Assembly (NCBI RefSeq): GCF_006345805.1
Contig: NW_021832486.1
Coordinates: 1-30,955, forward strand
Direction: 5' to 3'
Length of the DNA stretch: 30,955 nt
From: Octopus sinensis
Lineage: Eukaryota
In this document: positions 1,935 to 26,490 of the stretch, one piece after another
Layout of the letters: each line of letters starts with the position of its first letter
How positions within the stretch are numbered: position 1 is the stretch's first letter
Translations under genes and position numbers: made by a program
The notes under the pieces: model-generated
Told to the model about the DNA's origin: nothing
Databases searched by the model: none
Seen by the model: the letters and a program-made list of their open reading frames with translations, nothing else

Positions 1935-2175
1935 CCACACATATATATGCACACACTCATATATATATATATACACACATACACACATTTATATATATAC
2001 ACACATATACATATATATATACATGTATATACATATATATATACACACACACACATATATTATATATATATGTATGTATATATACACACACACACACAAC
2101 ATATATATATATTTATATAAACACACATATATATACATATATATATATTACATATATATATATATACATATATGT

Positions 2176-2221
<46 letters not shown>

Positions 2222-2235
2222 CACATGTGTATACA
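1860..2235. repeat. (TA)n/(CA)n compound microsatellite
   Basis: Direct reading. Confidence 0.95.
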
Positions 2236-2722
2236 TAATATTAGCTTGTGAAATTATCGCTGGCAGTCATTAAAAGTTGATCTATGTATGTGGTACGTTA
2301 CAGCGAGTGTTTATGGCAAGTGTGTGCATACAGGTTCCCAATTATAATTTACTGTGCATATTATTATTAGATGTTCTTATACAATGTTCGGATTCAGCAT
2401 TTCTGTACATGGCCAGTCCGTGCAAGTAAGACGACCAGAAGCAGCATCTGTTTATATGGGGAAACTTTATGTTTCGTCTTAACTTGCACACCTGCTGCTC
2501 CGTGCATCCATCTGCACCAATTCAAGAAACAGACAGACAGACAGACAGGTACAGACTGAGAGACGGAGATAGCCATCATACATAGATTGTACTGAACTGT
2601 TGTACATACTACATACATACATACATACACATCATATATGTATAAACACATATATACATACATGCACACATAGATGTCAATACATACACGAATACATATA
2701 CATACATACATACATACATACA

Positions 2723-2997
2723 TAAATCCTTAAATCCTTAAAAATGTTTTAGCCTGAAGGCCGCGGCCATGCTGGGGCACCACCGCTGAATGAGCTACAC
2801 TAGTTTGTGAATCCACCTCTGATACGTGGCACTTGATCAACAAGGGAGTTCGATGCTGCTGCCCGCATCCGTGTCTCCTGTCGGGAGGTAGGTTCATCTG
2901 GGACTCCCAACAAGAAGAGATCCAGTTTAGTTTTAAAGAAACCCACATCCACACCATGTAAGTCTCTCAGGCATTTAGGGAGGATGTTAAAAAACAG
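2723..2997 (-). mobile_element. CR1/L2-group LINE 3' end (ORF2 C-terminus, short 3' UTR, tail)
   Basis: Minus strand reads FNILPKCLRDLHGVDVGFFKTKLDLFLLGVPDEPTSRQETRMRAAASNSLVDQVPRIRGGFTN* (stop 2802-2800), resembling the FN.LP..LR...FK..LD.FL..VPD.P tail of CR1-like ORF2. It is followed by GGTGGTGCCCCAGCATGGCCGCGG...CTAAAAC and a repeated TAAGGATT tail. Confidence 0.75.
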
Positions 2998-3064
2998 ACT
3001 GAAACATGTATACTATATAACTCCATGCATATGTATACACACACACTTTTAGTCATATAGGTAC

Positions 3065-3076
3065 ATTATACATATA

Positions 3077-3110
<34 letters not shown>

Positions 3111-3327
3111 ATATATATATATATAGATATATATTACTATATATATACATAATATATATACATATATATATATATACACATATATATATACATACATATA
3201 TATACATATATATATACATACATACATATATATATACATATACATATACATATATATTATATACATACATATATATATATACATAATATATATATATATA
3301 CATACATATATATATATATATACATAC

Positions 3328-3391
<64 letters not shown>

Positions 3392-10904: not shown

Positions 10905-11033
10905 TAGTAGTAGCAGCAGTAGAAGCAGCAGCAGCAGTATTATTATTATTATTATTAGTAGTAGTAGTAGTAGTAGTAGTAGCAGCAGCAGCAGGACTAG
11001 TAGTAGTAGTAGTAGTAGCAGCAGCAGCAGGAC

Positions 11034-11066
<33 letters not shown>

Positions 11067-11535
11067 CAGGACTAGTAGTAGTAGTAGTAGTAGCAGCAGC
11101 AGCAGGACTAGTAGTAGTAGTAGTAGTAGTAGTAGTAGCAGGACTAGTAGTAGTAGTAGTAGTAGCAGCAGCAGCAGGACTAGTAGTAGTAGTAGTAGTA
11201 GTAGTAGTAGCAGGACTAGTAGTAGTAGTAGTAGTAGCAGCAGCAGCAGGACTAGTAGTAGTAGTAGTAGTAGTAGTAGTAGCAGGACTATAGTAGTAGT
11301 AGTAGCAGCAGCAGCACAGGACTAGTAGTAGTAGTAGTAGTAGTAGTAGCAGGACTAGTTAGTAGTAGTAGTAGTAGCAGCAGCAGCAGGACTAGTAGTA
11401 GTAGTAGTAGTAGTAGTAGTAGCAGGACTAGTAGTAGTAGTAGTAGTAGCAGCAGCAGCAGGACTAGTAGTAGTAGTAGTAGTAGTAGTAGCAGGACTAG
11501 TAGTAGTATAGTAGTAGCAGCAGCAGCAGCAGGAC

Positions 11536-11568
<33 letters not shown>

Positions 11569-11985
11569 CAGGACTAGTAGTAGTAGTAGTAGCAGTAGCA
11601 GCAGCAGGACTAGTAGTAGTAGTAGTAGCAGCAGCAGCAGGACTAGTAGTAGTAGTAGTAGTAGTAGTAGTAGCAGGACTAGTAGTAGTAGTAGTAGCAG
11701 CAGCAGCAGCAGGACTAGTAGTAGTAGTAGTAGCAGTGGCAGTAGTAATAGTACTAGTGGTGGTGGTAGCAGCAGCAGCAGCAGCAGTAGTATTAGTAGT
11801 AGTAGTAGTAATAGTAGCAGCAGCAGCAGTACTAGTAGTTGTAGCAGTGGCAACAGTGGTGGTGGTGGCTGTAGTAATAGTACTAGTGGTGGTGGTAGTG
11901 GCAGCAGTGGCAGCAGCAGCAATAGTAATAGTAGTAGTAGTAGTAGTAGCAGTAATAGTAGTAGTAGTAGTAGTAAGCAAGTAAT
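10905..11985. repeat. Compound (TAG)/(CAG) trinucleotide array with a higher-order ~72-bp unit
   Basis: Alternating (TAG)7(CAG)4GAC and (TAG)10(CAG)GAC subunits at about 10985-11720, degenerating into TAG/CAG/TGG/TAA mixtures to about 11985. Confidence 0.9.
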
Positions 11986-15506: not shown

Positions 15507-16083
15507 GGAGGCGAGCTGGCAGAAACATTAGCATGCCGGACGAAATGCTTAGCGGTATTTCGTCTGCAATTACGTTGTGAGTTCAAATTCCACCGGGGTC
15601 GACTTTGCCTTTCATCCTTTTGGGGTTGATAAATTAAGTACCAGTTATGCACTGCGGTCGATATAACCAACTTAATCCATTTGTCCTCTCTGTGCTTAGC
15701 CCCTTGTGGGTAGTAAAGAAATAGGTATTTCGTCTGCCGTTACGTTGTGAAATCAAATTCCGCCGAGGTTGACTTTGCCTTTCATCCTTTCAGGGTCGAT
15801 AAATTAAGTACCAGTTACGCACTGGGGTCGATATAACCGACTTAATCCGTTTGTCCTCTCTGTGTTTAGCCCCTTGTGGGTAGTAAAGAAATAGGTATTT
15901 CGTCTGCAGTTACGTTCTGAGTTCAAATTCCGCTGGGGTCGACTTTGCCTTTCATCCTTTTGGGGTCAATAAATTAAGTACCAGTTACACACTGGGGTCG
16001 ATGTAATCGACTTGATACCTATGTCTGTCCTTGTTTGTCCCCTCTATGTTTAGCCCCTTATGGGTAATAAAGAAATAGGTATT
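15507..16083 (+). mobile_element. SINE family A head-to-tail trimer (one head, three bodies; 170-bp period)
   Basis: GGTATTTCGTCTGC at 15554, 15724 and 15894; only the first unit has the GGAGGCGAGCTGGCAGAAAC head. Confidence 0.9.
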
Positions 16084-17245: not shown

Positions 17246-17784
17246 ATGTATGTATATGATGTATGGGGGTGGGAGTTGTACATGCTTATGTGTATGTGTT
17301 TTATATATATATATATACATATACGCATATACACACACACACAGAGGTGTGTATGTGTGCACACACATGCATGTGTACAAAAAAAATAATATTTGTACTT
17401 GTGTGTTTGTGGGTGTTTATGTGTACATGCATCTATCTATCGCTCTATCTATCAAATCAATGTGTGTGTGTGTGTGTGTGTATGTCTGTATACACAATAT
17501 AGATATACATACGTAAATATATAGATGAACAATATTATTACCATATGCATACATGCACGCATGCAAGCACACACACGGATACACATATATATAATTCCTA
17601 AACACACAAGCACATACACACATATATGCAGACATTATATATTATATAATATATATATATAATAATATATATATATATAATAATATATATATAATATATA
17701 TATTATATATATATATATATATTATATATATATATATATATATAGTATTATAATATATATGTATGTATGTATGTATGTATATAT

Positions 17785-17830
<46 letters not shown>

Positions 17831-17853
17831 ATATATATATATGTATATATGCG

Positions 17854-17916
<63 letters not shown>

Positions 17917-17920
17917 ATAT
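17069..17920. repeat. Compound (GA)n/(TA)n/(TG)n microsatellite region
   Basis: (GA)n near 17060-17087; (TA)n near 17135-17250 and 17635-17920. Confidence 0.9.
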
Positions 17921-18562
17921 ATGAACACGTGTATTTACATTTACATATTTATTACTTCATCATCATCATCATCATCATCATACTTCTACATCCGCTTTTC
18001 CATGCTTGCATGAATTGGACATATCTAGACATATTCACATATGTACATAGAACCACACACACACACACATACATACACACACACACTCACATCTGTAGAA
18101 TTTGTGAATACCTGCCATAGAAAGTAAATAATTTTCCAAGACAGACACGTCACAATACATCTCTATATACAGATCGGTTGCTTCAGCTTTGCTAAAACAT
18201 TTTGTATGTATCGTAACTAAGTAAATATATAAATAATAGCCACACACAAGCAAAAATACAATAAATATAGAATAAAATGAAATATTATAAGTTGGTCACT
18301 AATCCATGATTTAGTGAAATCTAAATTTAAAATAACTGAATACAGCAAACAACATAGATTTACAACAACAACAACAACAGCAGCAAGAATAATAGGATTT
18401 CTTTCATTTGCCACAAGGGCATCACGTGAGGGAAACATTACAAAGATAAGCTACAATTTGTGTGGATGTTTATATAAAATTGGTGAGGGGGAAAAAATGG
18501 GAGGGGAGGTGGTGGAACTGAAAAGAAAATTGGAGATGGTTTATAAAAGATGAGAATATATA

Positions 18563-18730
18563 GGTGCAGGAGTGGCTGTGTGGTAAGTAGCTTGCTTACC
18601 AACCACATGGTTCTGGGTTCAGTCCCACTGTGTGGCACTTTGGACAAGTGTTTTTATTGTGGTCTCAGGCCACCCAAAGCCTTGTGAGTGGATTTGGTAG
18701 ACGGAAACTGAAAGGAGCCTGTTATATGTC

Positions 18731-18766
<36 letters not shown>

Positions 18767-18780
18767 TTGTGTGTGTGTGC
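18563..18780 (+). mobile_element. SINE family B, 5' half ending in its internal (TG)n tract
   Basis: GGTGCAGGAGTGGCTGTGTGGTAAGTAGCTTGCTTACCAACCACATGGTTCTGGGTTCAGTCCCACTG head, directly followed by a second copy. Confidence 0.85.
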
Positions 18781-18784
18781 ATTT

Positions 18785-19209
18785 GTGCAGGAGTGGCCAT
18801 GTGGTAAGTAGCTTGTTTACCAGCCACATGGTTCCGAGTTCAGTCCCACTGTGTGGCACCTTGGGAAAGTGTTTCCTACTGTGGTCTCAGGCCAACCAAA
18901 GCCTTGTGAGTGGATTTGGTAGACGGAAAATGAAAGAACACTATCGTTTATATATGTGTGTGTGTGTGTGTGTGTTGTGTGTGTGTGTGTGTGTGTGTGT
19001 ACGTTTGTGTGTCTGTGTTTGTCCCTCCACCATTGCTTGAAAATCGATGTTGGCGTGTTTACGTCCTTGTAACTTAGCAGTTCAGCAAGGGAGACCGATA
19101 GAATAAGTACTAGGCTTACAAAGAATAAGTCCCGGGGCTCGATTTGCTCAACTAAAGGTGGTGCTCCAGCATGGCCCCAGTCACATGACTGAAACATGTA
19201 AAAAGAAAG
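18785..19209 (+). mobile_element. SINE family B, full length
   Basis: tRNA-like head, internal (TG)n, GAATAAGTACTAGGCTTACAAAGAATAAGTCC and 3' GGTGGTGCTCCAGCATGGCC...GACTGAAAC. Confidence 0.9.
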
Positions 19210-20740: not shown

Positions 20741-21561
20741 GGGCGGTGGAGGAGGGAGAAGAAGAGAAAGAAGGAAGGCAAGTAAAGTGAGGAGAAAGAA
20801 GAAGAGAAAGAAGAAAGGCGAGTTGAGTGAAGAGGGGAAAGAAGAAGAGAAAGAAGGAAGGCAAGTTGAGTGAAGAAGAGAAAGAAGACGAGAAAGAAGG
20901 GAGGCGAGTTGAGTGAAGAGGAGAAAGAAGAAGAGAAAGAAGGAAGGCAAGTGAAGTGAGGAGGAGAAAGAAGAAGAGAAAGAAGGAAGGCAAGTTGAGT
21001 GAAGAGAAAGAAGAAGAGAAAGAAGGAAGGCAAGTTGAGTGAAGAGAAAGAAGGAAGGCAAGTAAAGTGCGGAGGAGAAAGAAGAAGAGAAAGAAGGAAG
21101 GCAAGTTGAGTGAAGAGAAGAAAGAAGAAGAGAAAGAAAGAAGGCAAGTAAAGTGAGAAGGAGAAAGAAGAAGAGAAAGAAGGAAGGCAAGTTGAGTGAA
21201 GATAAAGAAGAAGAGAAAGAAGGAAGGCAAGTAAAGTGAGAAGGAGAAAGAAGAAGAGAAAGAAAGAAGGCAAGTTGAGTGAGGAGGAGAAAGAAGAAGA
21301 GAAAGAAGGAAGGCAAGTTGAGTGAAGAGAAAGAAGAAGAGAAAGAAAGAAGGCAAGTTGAGTGAGGAGGATAAAGAAGAAGAGAAAGAAGGAAGGCAAG
21401 TTGAGTGAAGAGAAAGAAGAAGAGAAAGAAAGAAGGCAAGTTGAGTGAGGAGGAGAAAGAAGAAGAGAAAGAAGGAAGGCAAGTTGAGTGAAGAGAAGAA
21501 AGAAGAAGAGAAAGAAGGAAGGCAAGTAGAGTGAAGAGAAAGAAGAAGAGAAAGAATGAAG
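20741..21561. repeat. Purine-rich ~40-43 bp minisatellite, 19 units
   Basis: Unit approx. GAAGAGAAAGAAGAAGAGAAAGAAGGAAGGCAAGTTGAGT; 19 GGC(A/G)AGT anchors counted between 20777 and 21521. Confidence 0.95.
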
Positions 21562-21585
21562 GCAATAATAATTATAATGATAACA

Positions 21586-23547: not shown

Positions 23548-23720
23548 AAGTGGTTCTCAACCAGGAACCGTATAAGATTTTTGGGGGTTCCATGTAACAA
23601 AAATGGCACACCGGGGATTCACAATAGTATTTTAAGGACCCCTGAAAAAATTTTGCTTTAGATGTATCTATTGGTATGTATTGCAAGAAACAGCTGGGTT
23701 TCTTTCTCCAAAAGCTAGGC
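23548..23720 (+). mobile_element. Possible hAT (Charlie-like) MITE left end
   Basis: Begins AGTGGTTCTCAACC, a typical hAT terminus motif; no matching right end seen. Confidence 0.4.
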
Positions 23721-23724
23721 TTCT

Positions 23725-24187
23725 TTCCGTTGTTTGAAATAATAAGGACACAGATCGTGTTGTATAGCCAGCTGGAGACGATGTCTCCTGGGACTAAATT
23801 ATGGCAACAGTCGTCCTAAACCAGGACTGCCATGTTATATTGGCAAACAATCTTTATTCCAAAGTACTGTTGCTAAATATCTCACGTTGTGAGGTTTAAA
23901 AATAGTAATTTTCTAATTTATAGATCAGTGACTAGTTGTCACTTTGAAATCTATATATTTCAAATGGGAATTTGGCAGCGCCACCTCTAGCCAAACAATT
24001 ATTCTGTGCTGATGAAGGGAAATATCCCAGAAATCACGATACACAGATATTGTTTTGAGGTGAATGGTGGTGCGAGATTCCCTTGTTCGAAAATATAAGG
24101 GCACTGATCATGTTGTATAGCCAGCTGGAGACGATGTCTCCTGGGGCTAAATTACAGCAACATTCGTCCTAAACCAGGACTGCCATG
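23725..24187 (+). mobile_element. Candidate non-LTR retrozyme / Penelope-associated element: 353-bp unit with 110-bp terminal redundancy
   Basis: Direct repeats 23725-23834 and 24078-24187 (11 mismatches in 110, no indels) bracket a hammerhead ribozyme motif. Confidence 0.6.
23993..24055 (+). ncRNA. Type I minimal hammerhead ribozyme motif
   Basis: Stem I UCUGUG(24003-08)/CACAGA(24042-47) plus AAACAAU(23993-99)/AUUGUUU(24049-55); core CUGAUGA(24009-15); stem II GGGA/UCCC with AAUA loop; GAAA(24030-33); 3-bp stem III; AUA cleavage triplet (24039-41). Atypical A.A pair at 10.1/11.1. Confidence 0.7.
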
Positions 24188-24769: not shown

Positions 24770-24986
24770 CATATACACACATATATATGAATGTATGTAA
24801 ACATATATATATACATATATATATATATATACATATATATTTTATACACATTTTTATATATACATATTTATATATATATATATTATACATATTTATATAT
24901 ATATACATATTTATATATATACCTATTTATATATATATACATATTTATATATATACATATTATATATATATTACATATTTATATAT

Positions 24987-25038
<52 letters not shown>

Positions 25039-25109
25039 ATATATAATATATATATATATTATAATACATATATATATTATATAATATTACATATATATAT
25101 ATATATATC

Positions 25110-25178
<69 letters not shown>

Positions 25179-25324
25179 TATATACATCTATATATATATA
25201 TATATATACATATATACATTATATATATATATATATATATCCATATATATATATATATATATATAATGTATGTCTGTCATATATGTATATAATATATATA
25301 TATATACATATATAATATATATAC

Positions 25325-25356
<32 letters not shown>

Positions 25357-25427
25357 CTATATACATATACACACAATATATATATACATATATATACATA
25401 CATATATATATACATAGATATACATAC

Positions 25428-25459
<32 letters not shown>

Positions 25460-25532
25460 ATATATGTATGTATGTATATATATGTATATATATTATATAA
25501 TACATATATATATATATATACTATATATATAC

Positions 25533-25565
<33 letters not shown>

Positions 25566-25614
25566 CATATACACACATATATATATATACATATATATAT
25601 ACATATATATATAC

Positions 25615-25661
<47 letters not shown>

Positions 25662-26065: not shown

Positions 26066-26104
<39 letters not shown>

Positions 26105-26426
26105 GTATATAAATATATATATATACATATTTATATGCACATATAAATATACATATACACAGATATAAATATGTATGTGCACACATACACATATATATAT
26201 ATATATATATAACATATATGTATATATACATATATATATACACACATATATATATACACACATATATATATAAATATACATATATATATATAAATATACA
26301 TATATATATAAATACATATATAATATATACACACACATATATATATAAATATATAAATATGTATAGATATTTATATACACATATTTATATATATAGACAT
26401 ATGTATATATACACACATATATGTAC

Positions 26427-26461
<35 letters not shown>

Positions 26462-26490
26462 TGTATGTATGCATGTGTGTACGTATATAT
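26055..26490. repeat. (TA)n/(CA)n/(TATG)n compound microsatellite
   Basis: Direct reading. Confidence 0.95.

What the first reader, a model, noticed from the sequence alone, without database searches (positions are those of the whole stretch)
23993..24055. Type I minimal hammerhead ribozyme hidden in unannotated DNA
Seen (+ strand RNA): AAACAAU-UAU-UCUGUG-CUGAUGA-A-GGGA-AAUA-UCCC-A-GAAA-UC-AC-GA-UA-CACAGA-U-AUUGUUU. All invariant core nucleotides are present (CUGAnGA 24009-15, GAAA 24030-33, UH = UA 24040-41), with predicted cleavage after A24041. Stem I has 6 bp, an internal loop and 7 more bp, positioned for the loop I/loop II contact of natural type I hammerheads. Stem II has 4 bp. Stem III is only 3 bp with a near-palindromic UCACGA cap. 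Known: such short-stem-III hammerheads are typical of Penelope-like elements and metazoan retrozymes and can cleave as dimers. Unusual: A24016.A24029 replaces the usual 10.1-11.1 pair, either an inactivating mutation or a family variant. I do not know whether this family is already described in this organism.
Basis: partly seen in the sequence, partly recalled or inferred. Interest (0 to 1): 0.85.

Follow-up and report, generated by a model that had tools for sequence, protein, structure and literature searches.

The report
Decayed hammerhead in octopus-type retrozyme repeat
The motif is real: it is one worn copy of a hammerhead-ribozyme-like sequence carried by a 353-base mobile repeat present more than 1,000 times in this (probably octopus) genome. 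That is a known kind of element, with one unusual base pair, and this copy is probably no longer active.

Summary
A relaxed hammerhead descriptor hits the window once and hits 300 shuffles never.

The motif is not an isolated oddity. It lies in a 463-nt insertion (23725-24187), made of 1.3 copies of a 353-nt unit. The 2.7-Gb genome holds at least 1,188 hammerhead-bearing copies.

Copies are 5'-truncated multimers with two alternative 3' ends about 55 nt apart and no poly(A). About 80% have a head-to-head inverted partial copy. This is the insertion signature of Penelope-like elements (PLEs).

The unit is non-coding, 40% GC and very strongly self-paired (z = -7.8), like the "non-LTR retrozymes" of other animals.

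The ancestral ribozyme has the canonical metazoan type I layout:
- helix I of 6 bp plus a bulge and an extension;
- helix II of 4 steps;
- helix III of 2 bp with a perfectly palindromic AUCGCGAU that gives a double hammerhead as dimer.

Position 10.1/11.1 is A.G in the family, never G-C. The window's A.A and its broken palindrome are CpG decay.

Rfam models do not detect it. Catalysis is untested, and the autonomous partner was not found.

Verdict: a new member of a known kind with a notable core-adjacent variant. This copy is a solitary relic.

The parts
23725..24187 (+). Whole insertion: 1.31 copies of the 353-nt repeat unit. It is the only copy in the window and has no inverted partner.
   Evidence: Direct repeat D5 with spacing 353. 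93.7% identity to the family consensus over 463 nt, and no other hit in the window.
23725..24077 (+). Complete 353-nt unit, carrying the single hammerhead motif
   Evidence: It differs from the majority consensus at 25 sites, many of them CpG-type.
24078..24187 (+). Partial second unit (unit positions 1-110; pseudo-LTR-like terminal repeat). It ends earlier than the usual family 3' ends at about 135 or 192.
23993..24055 (+). Hammerhead-type motif as reported (helix I distal through helix I distal)
24003..24008 (+). Helix I proximal 5' strand UCUGUG, pairing with CACAGA 24042-24047 (6 bp). Bulges UAU 24000-02 and U 24048 separate it from distal helix I (23993-99 with 24049-55).
24009..24015 (+). 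Core C3-A9, CUGAUGA
   Evidence: At least 90% conserved in 66 copies.
24016..24029 (+). Helix II with loop 2. A10.1 (24016) opposes A11.1 (24029); GGGA 24017-20 pairs with UCCC 24025-28; the loop is AAUA. The family ancestor was A-GGG-AAAUAA-CCC-G, so this copy carries G->A at 24029 and A->U at 24025.
24030..24033 (+). Core G12 A13 A14 A15.1 (GAAA)
24033..24040 (+). Helix III plus loop 3, AUCACGAU: 2 bp plus a 4-nt loop in cis. The ancestral form AUCGCGAU is a perfect palindrome; here G->A at 24036 breaks it.
24041..24042 (+). Predicted scissile bond, after H17 = A24041 and before C1.1 = C24042
   Evidence: Inference from hammerhead numbering; not tested
23966..23987 (+). 5' strand of a long imperfect extension of helix I (GGGAAUUU.GCA.CGCC ACCUC). 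It pairs with 24057-24082.
24057..24082 (+). 3' strand of the helix I extension. It runs across the unit junction at 24077/24078.

Best explanation
The site is one old, solitary copy of a short non-coding retroelement with a 353-nt unit that carries a canonical-layout type I hammerhead. The element is a non-autonomous, Penelope-like-element-mobilised repeat of the 'non-LTR retrozyme' kind, in what is probably an octopus genome.

Inferred life cycle of the family:
1. Transcripts spanning at least two units bring two hammerheads together.
2. Their palindromic AUCGCGAU segments pair into an 8-bp intermolecular helix III, forming a double hammerhead.
3. Each ribozyme cuts after ...GAUA, releasing a 353-nt, highly self-paired monomer.
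4. By analogy with other retrozymes, a host tRNA ligase can circularise the monomer.
5. Either the circle or unprocessed multimeric RNA is copied by a PLE reverse transcriptase supplied in trans. Copying starts internally near unit position 135, leaving a roughly 55-nt 'tail' class ending near 192.
6. The cDNA is inserted by target-primed reverse transcription. This gives 5'-truncated multimers, often with an inverted partial copy.

Shown here: the motif, the family, its copy number, the insertion architecture, the ancestral sequence, the predicted dimer fold and the strong RNA self-pairing.

Inferred only: self-cleavage, circularisation, and which PLE mobilises it.

The family hammerhead has A.G instead of G-C at 10.1/11.1. 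The window copy has decayed further: A.A, a broken palindrome, a changed loop 2 and no partner hammerhead. It is most likely inert DNA.
For: Family and copy number:
- 82 scored matches at 88-92% identity out of 3,032 first-look candidates.
- Exhaustive pattern counts: 285 exact and 1,188 within 3 mismatches of the 33-nt CpG-degenerate hammerhead pattern, with reverse-pattern controls of 0.
- 624 sites for a 15-mer of the core, control 1.

PLE-type architecture:
- Variable 5' truncation, with copies running through unit junctions (0.5 to about 4 units).
- Two 3'-end classes, at about 133-141 and 187-198, without poly(A).
- About 23 of 28 loci in the less biased sample have a head-to-head inverted partial copy, which mostly carries the longer 'tail' end.
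- These match the hallmarks described for PLEs (PMC8557442; PMC11167929).
- The genome encodes intact RT plus GIY-YIG PLE ORFs of 780-883 aa.

Retrozyme-like unit:
- 353 nt, 40% GC, longest stop-free stretch 73 aa.
- Monomer minimum free energy -124.5 kcal/mol against -83.2 +/- 5.3 for shuffles, z = -7.8.
- Mussel retrozymes are 350-390 nt, low in GC and highly self-paired (PMC7229834).

Hammerhead:
- The ancestral sequence inferred from 66 copies keeps all core bases.
- It has helix I of 6 bp, helix II of 4 steps and helix III of 2 bp plus a palindromic tetraloop. That is the canonical metazoan layout in PMC4209133.
- The homodimer minimum-energy structure is a double hammerhead: -39.1 against 2 x -16.2 kcal/mol.
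- A mismatch at the base of helix II has a working precedent, the U.U of axolotl HHR_Amex2 (PMC7229834).
Against: - No Rfam hammerhead model reports the motif at E<=10, for the window copy or for a consensus-like copy.
- The G10.1-C11.1 pair, described as highly conserved in canonical and PLE hammerheads (PMC4209133), is absent from the whole family.
- No covariation evidence is available. The copies are one young, homogeneous family, about 6% from consensus, and no other animal genome could be searched.
- No copy was seen whose 5' end lies at the predicted cleavage site.
- Only roughly 5-10% of hammerhead copies have a tandem partner, estimated from 13 tandem 15-mer pairs against 624 single sites.
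- The autonomous partner was not identified. The two PLE ORF loci examined share nothing with the unit.
- For a PLE tested in vitro, hammerhead cleavage was not needed for insertion (PMC11167929).
Confidence: 0.8

Rival explanations
1. Dead-ribozyme relic at the family level. The repeat descends from a hammerhead-bearing PLE or retrozyme, but the A.G at 10.1/11.1 already abolished cleavage in the master copy. The family then spread purely as unprocessed linear or multimeric RNA copied by a PLE reverse transcriptase, with the hammerhead sequence riding along.
For: - G10.1-C11.1 is absent in all copies.
- Rfam models are silent.
- No 5' ends lie at the cleavage site.
- Most insertions carry one hammerhead only.
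- Hammerhead cleavage was dispensable for PLE insertion in vitro (PMC11167929).
- Naiad PLEs proliferate without hammerheads (PMC8557442).
Against: - Apart from 10.1/11.1, the ancestral sequence keeps every core base, the 6-bp helix I with its bulge, and a perfect 8-nt palindrome containing two mutable CpGs. That would be unexpected after a long period without selection in the master lineage.
- A helix II base mismatch (U.U) still cleaves in axolotl retrozymes (PMC7229834).
- The predicted dimer fold is the catalytic one.
Confidence: 0.35
2. Chance resemblance. A repeat family happens to contain CUGAUGA...GAAA with flanking complementarity, and it has no evolutionary connection to hammerhead ribozymes.
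For: - Rfam does not call it.
- A relaxed descriptor is needed.
- Any chance motif in a transposon is amplified with it, so copy number alone proves nothing.
Against: - 0 hits in 300 shuffles of the window.
- Several features not demanded by the descriptor coincide: a palindromic AUCGCGAU, a helix I of exactly 6 bp followed by a UAU/U internal loop and a long extension, and a helix II of 4 steps.
- It sits in a repeat with PLE insertion hallmarks, exactly where such ribozymes are known to occur.
Confidence: 0.04
3. Plain satellite DNA, amplified by unequal crossing-over like classic newt satellite 2 arrays, rather than a retrotransposed element.
For: - Unit size and tandem structure.
- Arrays of 3-4 units exist.
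- A 163-nt derivative forms a local array of at least 7 units (L002).
Against: - Copies are dispersed over all large contigs as short insertions of 0.5-3 units.
- They have defined 3' ends, variable 5' truncation and inverted partners.
- Only about 5-10% of hammerheads have a tandem neighbour.
Confidence: 0.05

Closest known systems
Metazoan non-LTR retrozymes (Cervera & de la Pena 2020, PMC7229834), especially the 350-390-nt mussel repeats
   Same: A short, non-coding, low-GC unit of 353 nt. It carries a type I hammerhead on one strand, occurs as tandem multimers, and has very strong RNA self-pairing. It coexists with PLEs in the same genome.
   Different: - Most octopus-type copies are single insertions of 0.5-2 units with one hammerhead, rather than long arrays.
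- 10.1/11.1 is A.G.
- RNA circles have not been shown.
- Cephalopods are not mentioned in that paper.
Hammerheads of Penelope-like elements (min-HHR; Cervera & de la Pena 2014, PMC4209133) and PLE insertion architecture (Craig et al. 2021, PMC8557442; Frangieh et al. 2024, PMC11167929)
   Same: - Partial tandems.
- An inverted 5'-truncated neighbour.
- A 'tail' at one end and no poly(A).
- A palindromic helix III region implying dimer action.
   Different: - The unit has no ORF.
- The ribozyme has a real, though short, helix III and a 6-bp helix I with an internal loop, which is the canonical layout and not the minimal one.
- The genome's own PLE-type hammerheads found by RF00163 (GUACCUGAAGAGACCC...GGGUCGAAACAUGUGUCGUAC, G10.1-C11.1) are a different sequence family.
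Amphibian satellite 2 / axolotl retrozyme hammerheads (HHR_Amex1 and HHR_Amex2)
   Same: - A very short helix III with a palindromic tetraloop.
- Weak cleavage as a monomer and better cleavage as a dimer.
- HHR_Amex2 has a mismatch (U.U) at the base of helix II yet still cleaves.
   Different: - The mismatch here is purine-purine (A.G).
- Copy number is about 1,200, not about 120,000.
- There are no biochemical data for the octopus-type motif.
Schistosoma Sm-alpha type I hammerhead (from my own memory of the sequence; not fetched or tested here)
   Same: CUGAUGA core, a 4-step helix II capped by an A-rich AAAUA-like loop, and a helix I of about 6 bp followed by a UAY bulge that makes the loop-bulge tertiary contact.
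   Different: The Schistosoma ribozyme has G10.1-C11.1 and a longer helix III. I did not check the equivalence of the tertiary-contact bases with any tool.

Membership tests
Hammerhead ribozyme (type I) | Conserved core: C3 U4 G5 A6 N7 G8 A9, G12 A13 A14, A15.1-U16.1, H17 not G | tested here: met
   Read directly at 24009-15, 24030-33 and 24040-41. The core is intact in 58 of 66 family copies.
Hammerhead ribozyme (type I) | Three helices around the core, with helix I open | tested here: met
   Helix I has 6 bp plus 7 bp plus an extension. Helix II has 3-4 bp. Helix III has only 2 bp in cis but 8 bp in the predicted ancestral dimer.
Hammerhead ribozyme (type I) | Watson-Crick 10.1-11.1 pair (normally G-C) closing helix II | tested here: not met
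   A.A in the window. A.G (32) or A.A (31) in 66 copies. An exhaustive pattern search found only about 20 sporadic non-A 10.1 variants and no G-C subfamily.
Hammerhead ribozyme (type I) | Score at or above the Rfam gathering threshold (RF00163 and related models) | tested here: not met
   No hammerhead hit, even at E<=10, for the window copy or for a consensus-like copy. RF00163 does find other hammerheads in the same genome.
Hammerhead ribozyme (type I) | Compensatory covariation in helices I-III among relatives | tested here: inconclusive
   Only one homogeneous family, about 6% from consensus, was available. No other eukaryotic genome was searchable.
Hammerhead ribozyme (type I) | Site-specific self-cleavage | not testable with these tools
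   Needs in vitro transcription or RNA-end data.
Metazoan non-LTR retrozyme | Tandem repeats of about 170-400 bp, each with a type I hammerhead, low GC, and no ORF, LTR, PBS or PPT | tested here: met
   The unit is 353 nt, 40% GC, with no stop-free stretch over 73 aa. Multimers of up to about 4 units exist, though most insertions hold one hammerhead.
Metazoan non-LTR retrozyme | Highly self-paired monomer RNA | tested here: met
   Minimum free energy -124.5 kcal/mol, z = -7.8 against shuffles.
Metazoan non-LTR retrozyme | Expression as linear and circular RNAs of unit length | not testable with these tools
PLE-mobilised (non-autonomous Penelope-like) element | Partial-tandem insertions, an adjacent inverted 5'-truncated copy, and a terminal 'tail' on one side | tested here: met
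   compared with the descriptions in PMC8557442 and PMC11167929.
PLE-mobilised (non-autonomous Penelope-like) element | Sequence shared with the ends or pLTR of an autonomous PLE in the same genome | tested here: inconclusive
   PLE ORFs exist, but the two loci examined share no sequence with the unit.

The most novel reading that the evidence does not exclude
The A10.1.G11.1 hammerhead is a naturally active variant. In it a third purine-purine pair extends the core's tandem G.A pairs. Current covariance models miss it, so cephalopod genomes would hide a whole retrozyme family that produces 353-nt circular RNAs.
Probability: 0.35. Interest if true: 0.55.

Novelty: new member of a known kind. 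Interest (0 to 1): 0.35.

Why it matters
If the family ribozyme cleaves, three things follow:
- It would extend retrozymes and their small circular RNAs to cephalopods.
- It would show that the 'highly conserved' G10.1-C11.1 pair can be replaced by A.G in nature.
- It would show that standard Rfam-based scans undercount hammerheads in animal genomes.

If it does not cleave, it is a clean natural example of a PLE-dependent repeat that spread to more than 1,000 copies with a dead ribozyme. That bears on the open question of whether hammerheads are needed for PLE or retrozyme mobility at all.

For annotation, the 463-nt block should simply be masked as a PLE-type non-autonomous repeat.

Tried and rejected
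1. Rfam was run at gathering score on the window, and at E<=10 on the site and on a consensus-like copy. There were no hammerhead hits. The only weak hit nearby, mir-1597 at E = 6.5, is noise.

2. RF00163 was run across the genome. It found a different, canonical PLE-type hammerhead family and not this one. Those loci held no PLE ORF.

3. I looked for a sister subfamily with G10.1-C11.1 using an exhaustive pattern. Only sporadic point variants turned up.

4. I looked for the autonomous partner with a GIY-YIG search. The two full-length PLE loci I fetched have no similarity to the unit and no hammerhead near the ORF.

5. I tested whether 5' ends of insertions fall at the predicted cleavage site (unit 317/318). 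None do. The ends are scattered, with loose clusters near unit positions 1-7 and 242-262.

6. I compared conservation of the hammerhead with the rest of the unit among copies. Non-CpG divergence is 0.029 against 0.051. I reject this as evidence because the sample was selected by BLAST with the hammerhead region.

7. I checked for young arrays. Units within one insertion are only about 88% identical, so there is no sign of recent activity.

8. Literature searches for octopus or cephalopod together with retrozyme or hammerhead found no description of this family. A search for A10.1 variants found nothing.

9. Organism identity: the genome size (2.719 Gb), the 30 large contigs and the repeat content fit an octopus assembly. 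This is partly from my memory, with only a weak literature check.

Full report
**Observation.** All invariant hammerhead core bases are present. Helix I has 6 bp, then a UAU/U internal loop, then 7 bp. Helix II is GGGA/UCCC, flanked by an A opposite an A. Helix III can form only 2 bp in cis, closing a 4-nt loop.

A descriptor I wrote finds this single site in the window, and only when a 10.1/11.1 mismatch is allowed. It finds nothing in 300 dinucleotide-preserving shuffles, both strands. Rfam does not see the motif. There were 0 hits at gathering score. There was no hammerhead hit at E<=10 around the site, nor on a consensus-like copy from elsewhere in the genome.

**Context in the window.** The motif lies inside a 463-nt block, 23725-24187. 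The block consists of a 353-nt unit followed by the first 110 nt of the same unit (family D5). It is the only copy in the window.

The window is eukaryotic: rich in microsatellites and SINE-like repeats, with GC from 14% to 49%. Its assembly is 2.72 Gb with 30 chromosome-sized contigs. From memory, and from a weak literature check, this fits an octopus genome. I treat that as probable, not shown.

**The family.** The 463-nt block matches many places in the genome at 88-92% identity, with 3,032 first-look candidates. Exhaustive pattern counts give the following:

| Pattern | Sites | Reverse-pattern control |
|---|---|---|
| CTGATGAAGGGAAATAACCYRGAAATYRYRATA, exact | 285 | 0 |
| Same pattern, within 3 mismatches | 1,188 | 0 |
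| 15-mer CTGATGAAGGGAAAT | 624 | 1 |

Thirty near-complete units average 93.7% identity to their consensus. Divergence is 4.7% at ordinary sites and about 30% at CpG sites. The family is therefore old enough to show heavy CpG decay.

**Architecture of the copies.** The first sample was biased toward the window's own structure. A second sample, fetched with only the hammerhead-bearing part as query, shows the real pattern:
- Insertions begin at variable unit positions, that is, they are 5'-truncated.
- They run through one to three unit junctions.
- They end in one of two narrow classes, at unit positions of roughly 133-141 or 187-198, with no poly(A).
- About 23 of 28 loci have a second partial copy in inverted, head-to-head orientation immediately upstream. 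That copy usually carries the longer end.

Partial tandems, an adjacent inverted 5'-truncated copy and a short 'tail' at one end are the published hallmarks of Penelope-like element insertions (PMC8557442). They are explained by internal initiation of reverse transcription (PMC11167929). The genome also encodes PLE proteins. There are 149 GIY-YIG matches, some inside 780-883-aa ORFs that also contain the reverse-transcriptase motifs.

**The unit as an RNA.** The unit is 40% GC and has no stop-free stretch over 73 aa. Cut at the predicted cleavage site, the 353-nt monomer folds to -124.5 kcal/mol, against -83.2 +/- 5.3 for shuffles (z = -7.8). Helix I of the hammerhead continues into a long imperfect rod. 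The window copy keeps this rod (23966-23987 with 24057-82). The rest of the unit forms a branched domain.

Size, composition, non-coding nature and strong self-pairing match the metazoan non-LTR retrozymes. Mussel retrozymes, for example, have 350-390-nt units (PMC7229834). [quoted passage not shown]

**The ancestral ribozyme.** Sixty-six distinct copies, read with CpG decay in mind, give:

...GAACAAU-UAU-UCUGUG-CUGAUGA-A-GGG-AAAUAA-CCC-G-GAAA-UCGCGA-UA|CACAGA-U-AUUGUUUUG

- Helix I has 6 bp and helix II has 4 steps. Helix III has 2 bp with a palindromic tetraloop. This is the 'canonical metazoan type I' layout described in PMC4209133, not the minimal PLE form.
- AUCGCGAU is a perfect palindrome.
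- As a monomer, the minimum-energy fold is a non-catalytic alternative: -16.2 against -9.7 kcal/mol for the hammerhead fold.
- As a homodimer, the minimum-energy fold is a double hammerhead with an 8-bp intermolecular helix III: -39.1 kcal/mol.

This fits the known dimer mode of short-helix-III hammerheads.

**The 10.1/11.1 question.** In the family, 10.1 is A and 11.1 is G. The G sits in a CpG and has decayed to A in about half of the copies: A.G occurs 32 times and A.A 31 times among 66.

An exhaustive pattern requiring a non-A at 10.1 returned only about 20 scattered family copies. None restores a G-C pair. The deviation from the 'highly conserved G10.1-C11.1' is therefore a fixed family trait, and the window's A.A is a secondary mutation.

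Whether A.G allows catalysis cannot be decided here. Structurally it would add a third purine-purine pair next to the core's two G.A pairs; this is my inference. A U.U mismatch at the same place in axolotl HHR_Amex2 still cleaves, better as a dimer.

**State of this copy.** Relative to the ancestor, the window's hammerhead has four changes:
- G->A at 23993, which is harmless (G.U becomes A-U);
- A->U at 24025, which shrinks loop 2 from 6 to 4 nt;
- G->A at 24029, giving A.A;
- G->A at 24036, which breaks the palindrome.

Its helix III self-duplex drops from -12.1 to -1.9 kcal/mol, and its dimer no longer folds as a double hammerhead. There is no second hammerhead in the window. I rate this copy as most likely inactive.

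**What remains inferred.**
- Self-cleavage, circularisation and the identity of the mobilising PLE were not shown.
- No insertion starts at the cleavage site.
- Only roughly 5-10% of hammerheads have a tandem partner. This estimate comes from 13 tandem 15-mer pairs against 624 sites, corrected for the fraction of copies that keep the 15-mer.
- A PLE tested in vitro did not need its hammerhead for insertion.

The rival view, that the family spread with an already dead ribozyme, therefore remains serious (about 0.35).

**Verdict.** The element is a new member of a known kind, a PLE-type non-autonomous retrozyme-like repeat. It carries an unusual A.G at 10.1/11.1 that Rfam models miss. The copy in the window is a decayed relic.

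Noticed in passing
L002 about 1990-3100 (G000:C10064, about 35.8-36.9 kb): A local array of at least 7 units with a period of about 163 nt. It is built from unit positions 1-137 joined to the last roughly 26 nt of the unit (...TTTCTTTGAGCTGAGTGGGGGTGCTAGA). This is a hammerhead-less deletion derivative that has become a small satellite.
   Followed up: partly
G000:C1 110.7-115.0 Mb and 208.2-212.5 Mb (contig length 213.4 Mb); G000:C2 195.9-207.9 Mb (contig length 207.9 Mb); starts of C3 and C7: Hammerhead copies are very unevenly spread. On C1, 15 and 14 of about 51 listed sites fall into two 4.3-Mb stretches, one of them at the contig end. Similar crowding occurs at the end of C2 and at the starts of C3 and C7. 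This may reflect subtelomeric or centromeric preference, or assembly structure.
   Followed up: no
G000 loci L031, L034-L037, L039-L046, L049, L050: A different, canonical PLE-type hammerhead family, GUACCUGAAGAGACCC-AGAAC-GGGUCGAAACAUGUGUCGUAC, with G10.1-C11.1 and a palindromic ACAUGU. RF00163 detects it, with 8 hits over the cut-off. L038 and L047 carry a roughly 60-nt insertion in helix II.
   Followed up: partly
L032 (G000:C5:60037714-60037760): A single Schistosoma-like type I hammerhead, CUGACGAGUCCCAAUUAUAGGACGAAAUCGCAGUC, scoring 41.9 bits. It lies next to a LINE-like ORF fragment. It is unrelated to the family studied here.
   Followed up: no
L081 (G000:C10:27568300-27573600) and L082 (G000:C6:82397300-82402300): Apparently intact Penelope-like ORFs of 883 and 780 aa, with reverse-transcriptase (YLDD) and C-terminal GIY-YIG motifs. 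No hammerhead core was seen in their flanks by a simple scan.
   Followed up: partly
Family copies, unit positions 1-7 and 242-262: The 5' ends of insertions show loose clusters at these two places rather than at the cleavage site (317/318). The 242-262 class gives a recurrent form of about 590 nt with two hammerheads. This could mark a transcription start or a reverse-transcriptase stop at the helix I rod.
   Followed up: partly
window 24781-25661: An (AT)n tract of about 880 bp (449 repeats, 80% matches) lies 600 bp downstream of the insertion. Further long AT microsatellites are at 588-823, 1851-2219, 3091-3369, 17636-17922 and 26068-26470.
   Followed up: no
window 10905-11975 and 20749-21565: A 1.07-kb (TAG)n/(CAG)n block with a 36-nt higher-order period, and an 817-bp purine-rich minisatellite with a 43-nt unit and extreme GC and AT skew.
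   Followed up: no
window 15554-16013 and 18564-19009: Tandem copies (170 nt x 2.7 and 221 nt x 2) of tRNA-like SINE sequences. From memory they resemble the abundant octopus SINEs. A SINE-end-like fragment, AGGCTTCTTTC, abuts the 5' end of the insertion at 23717-23727.
   Followed up: no
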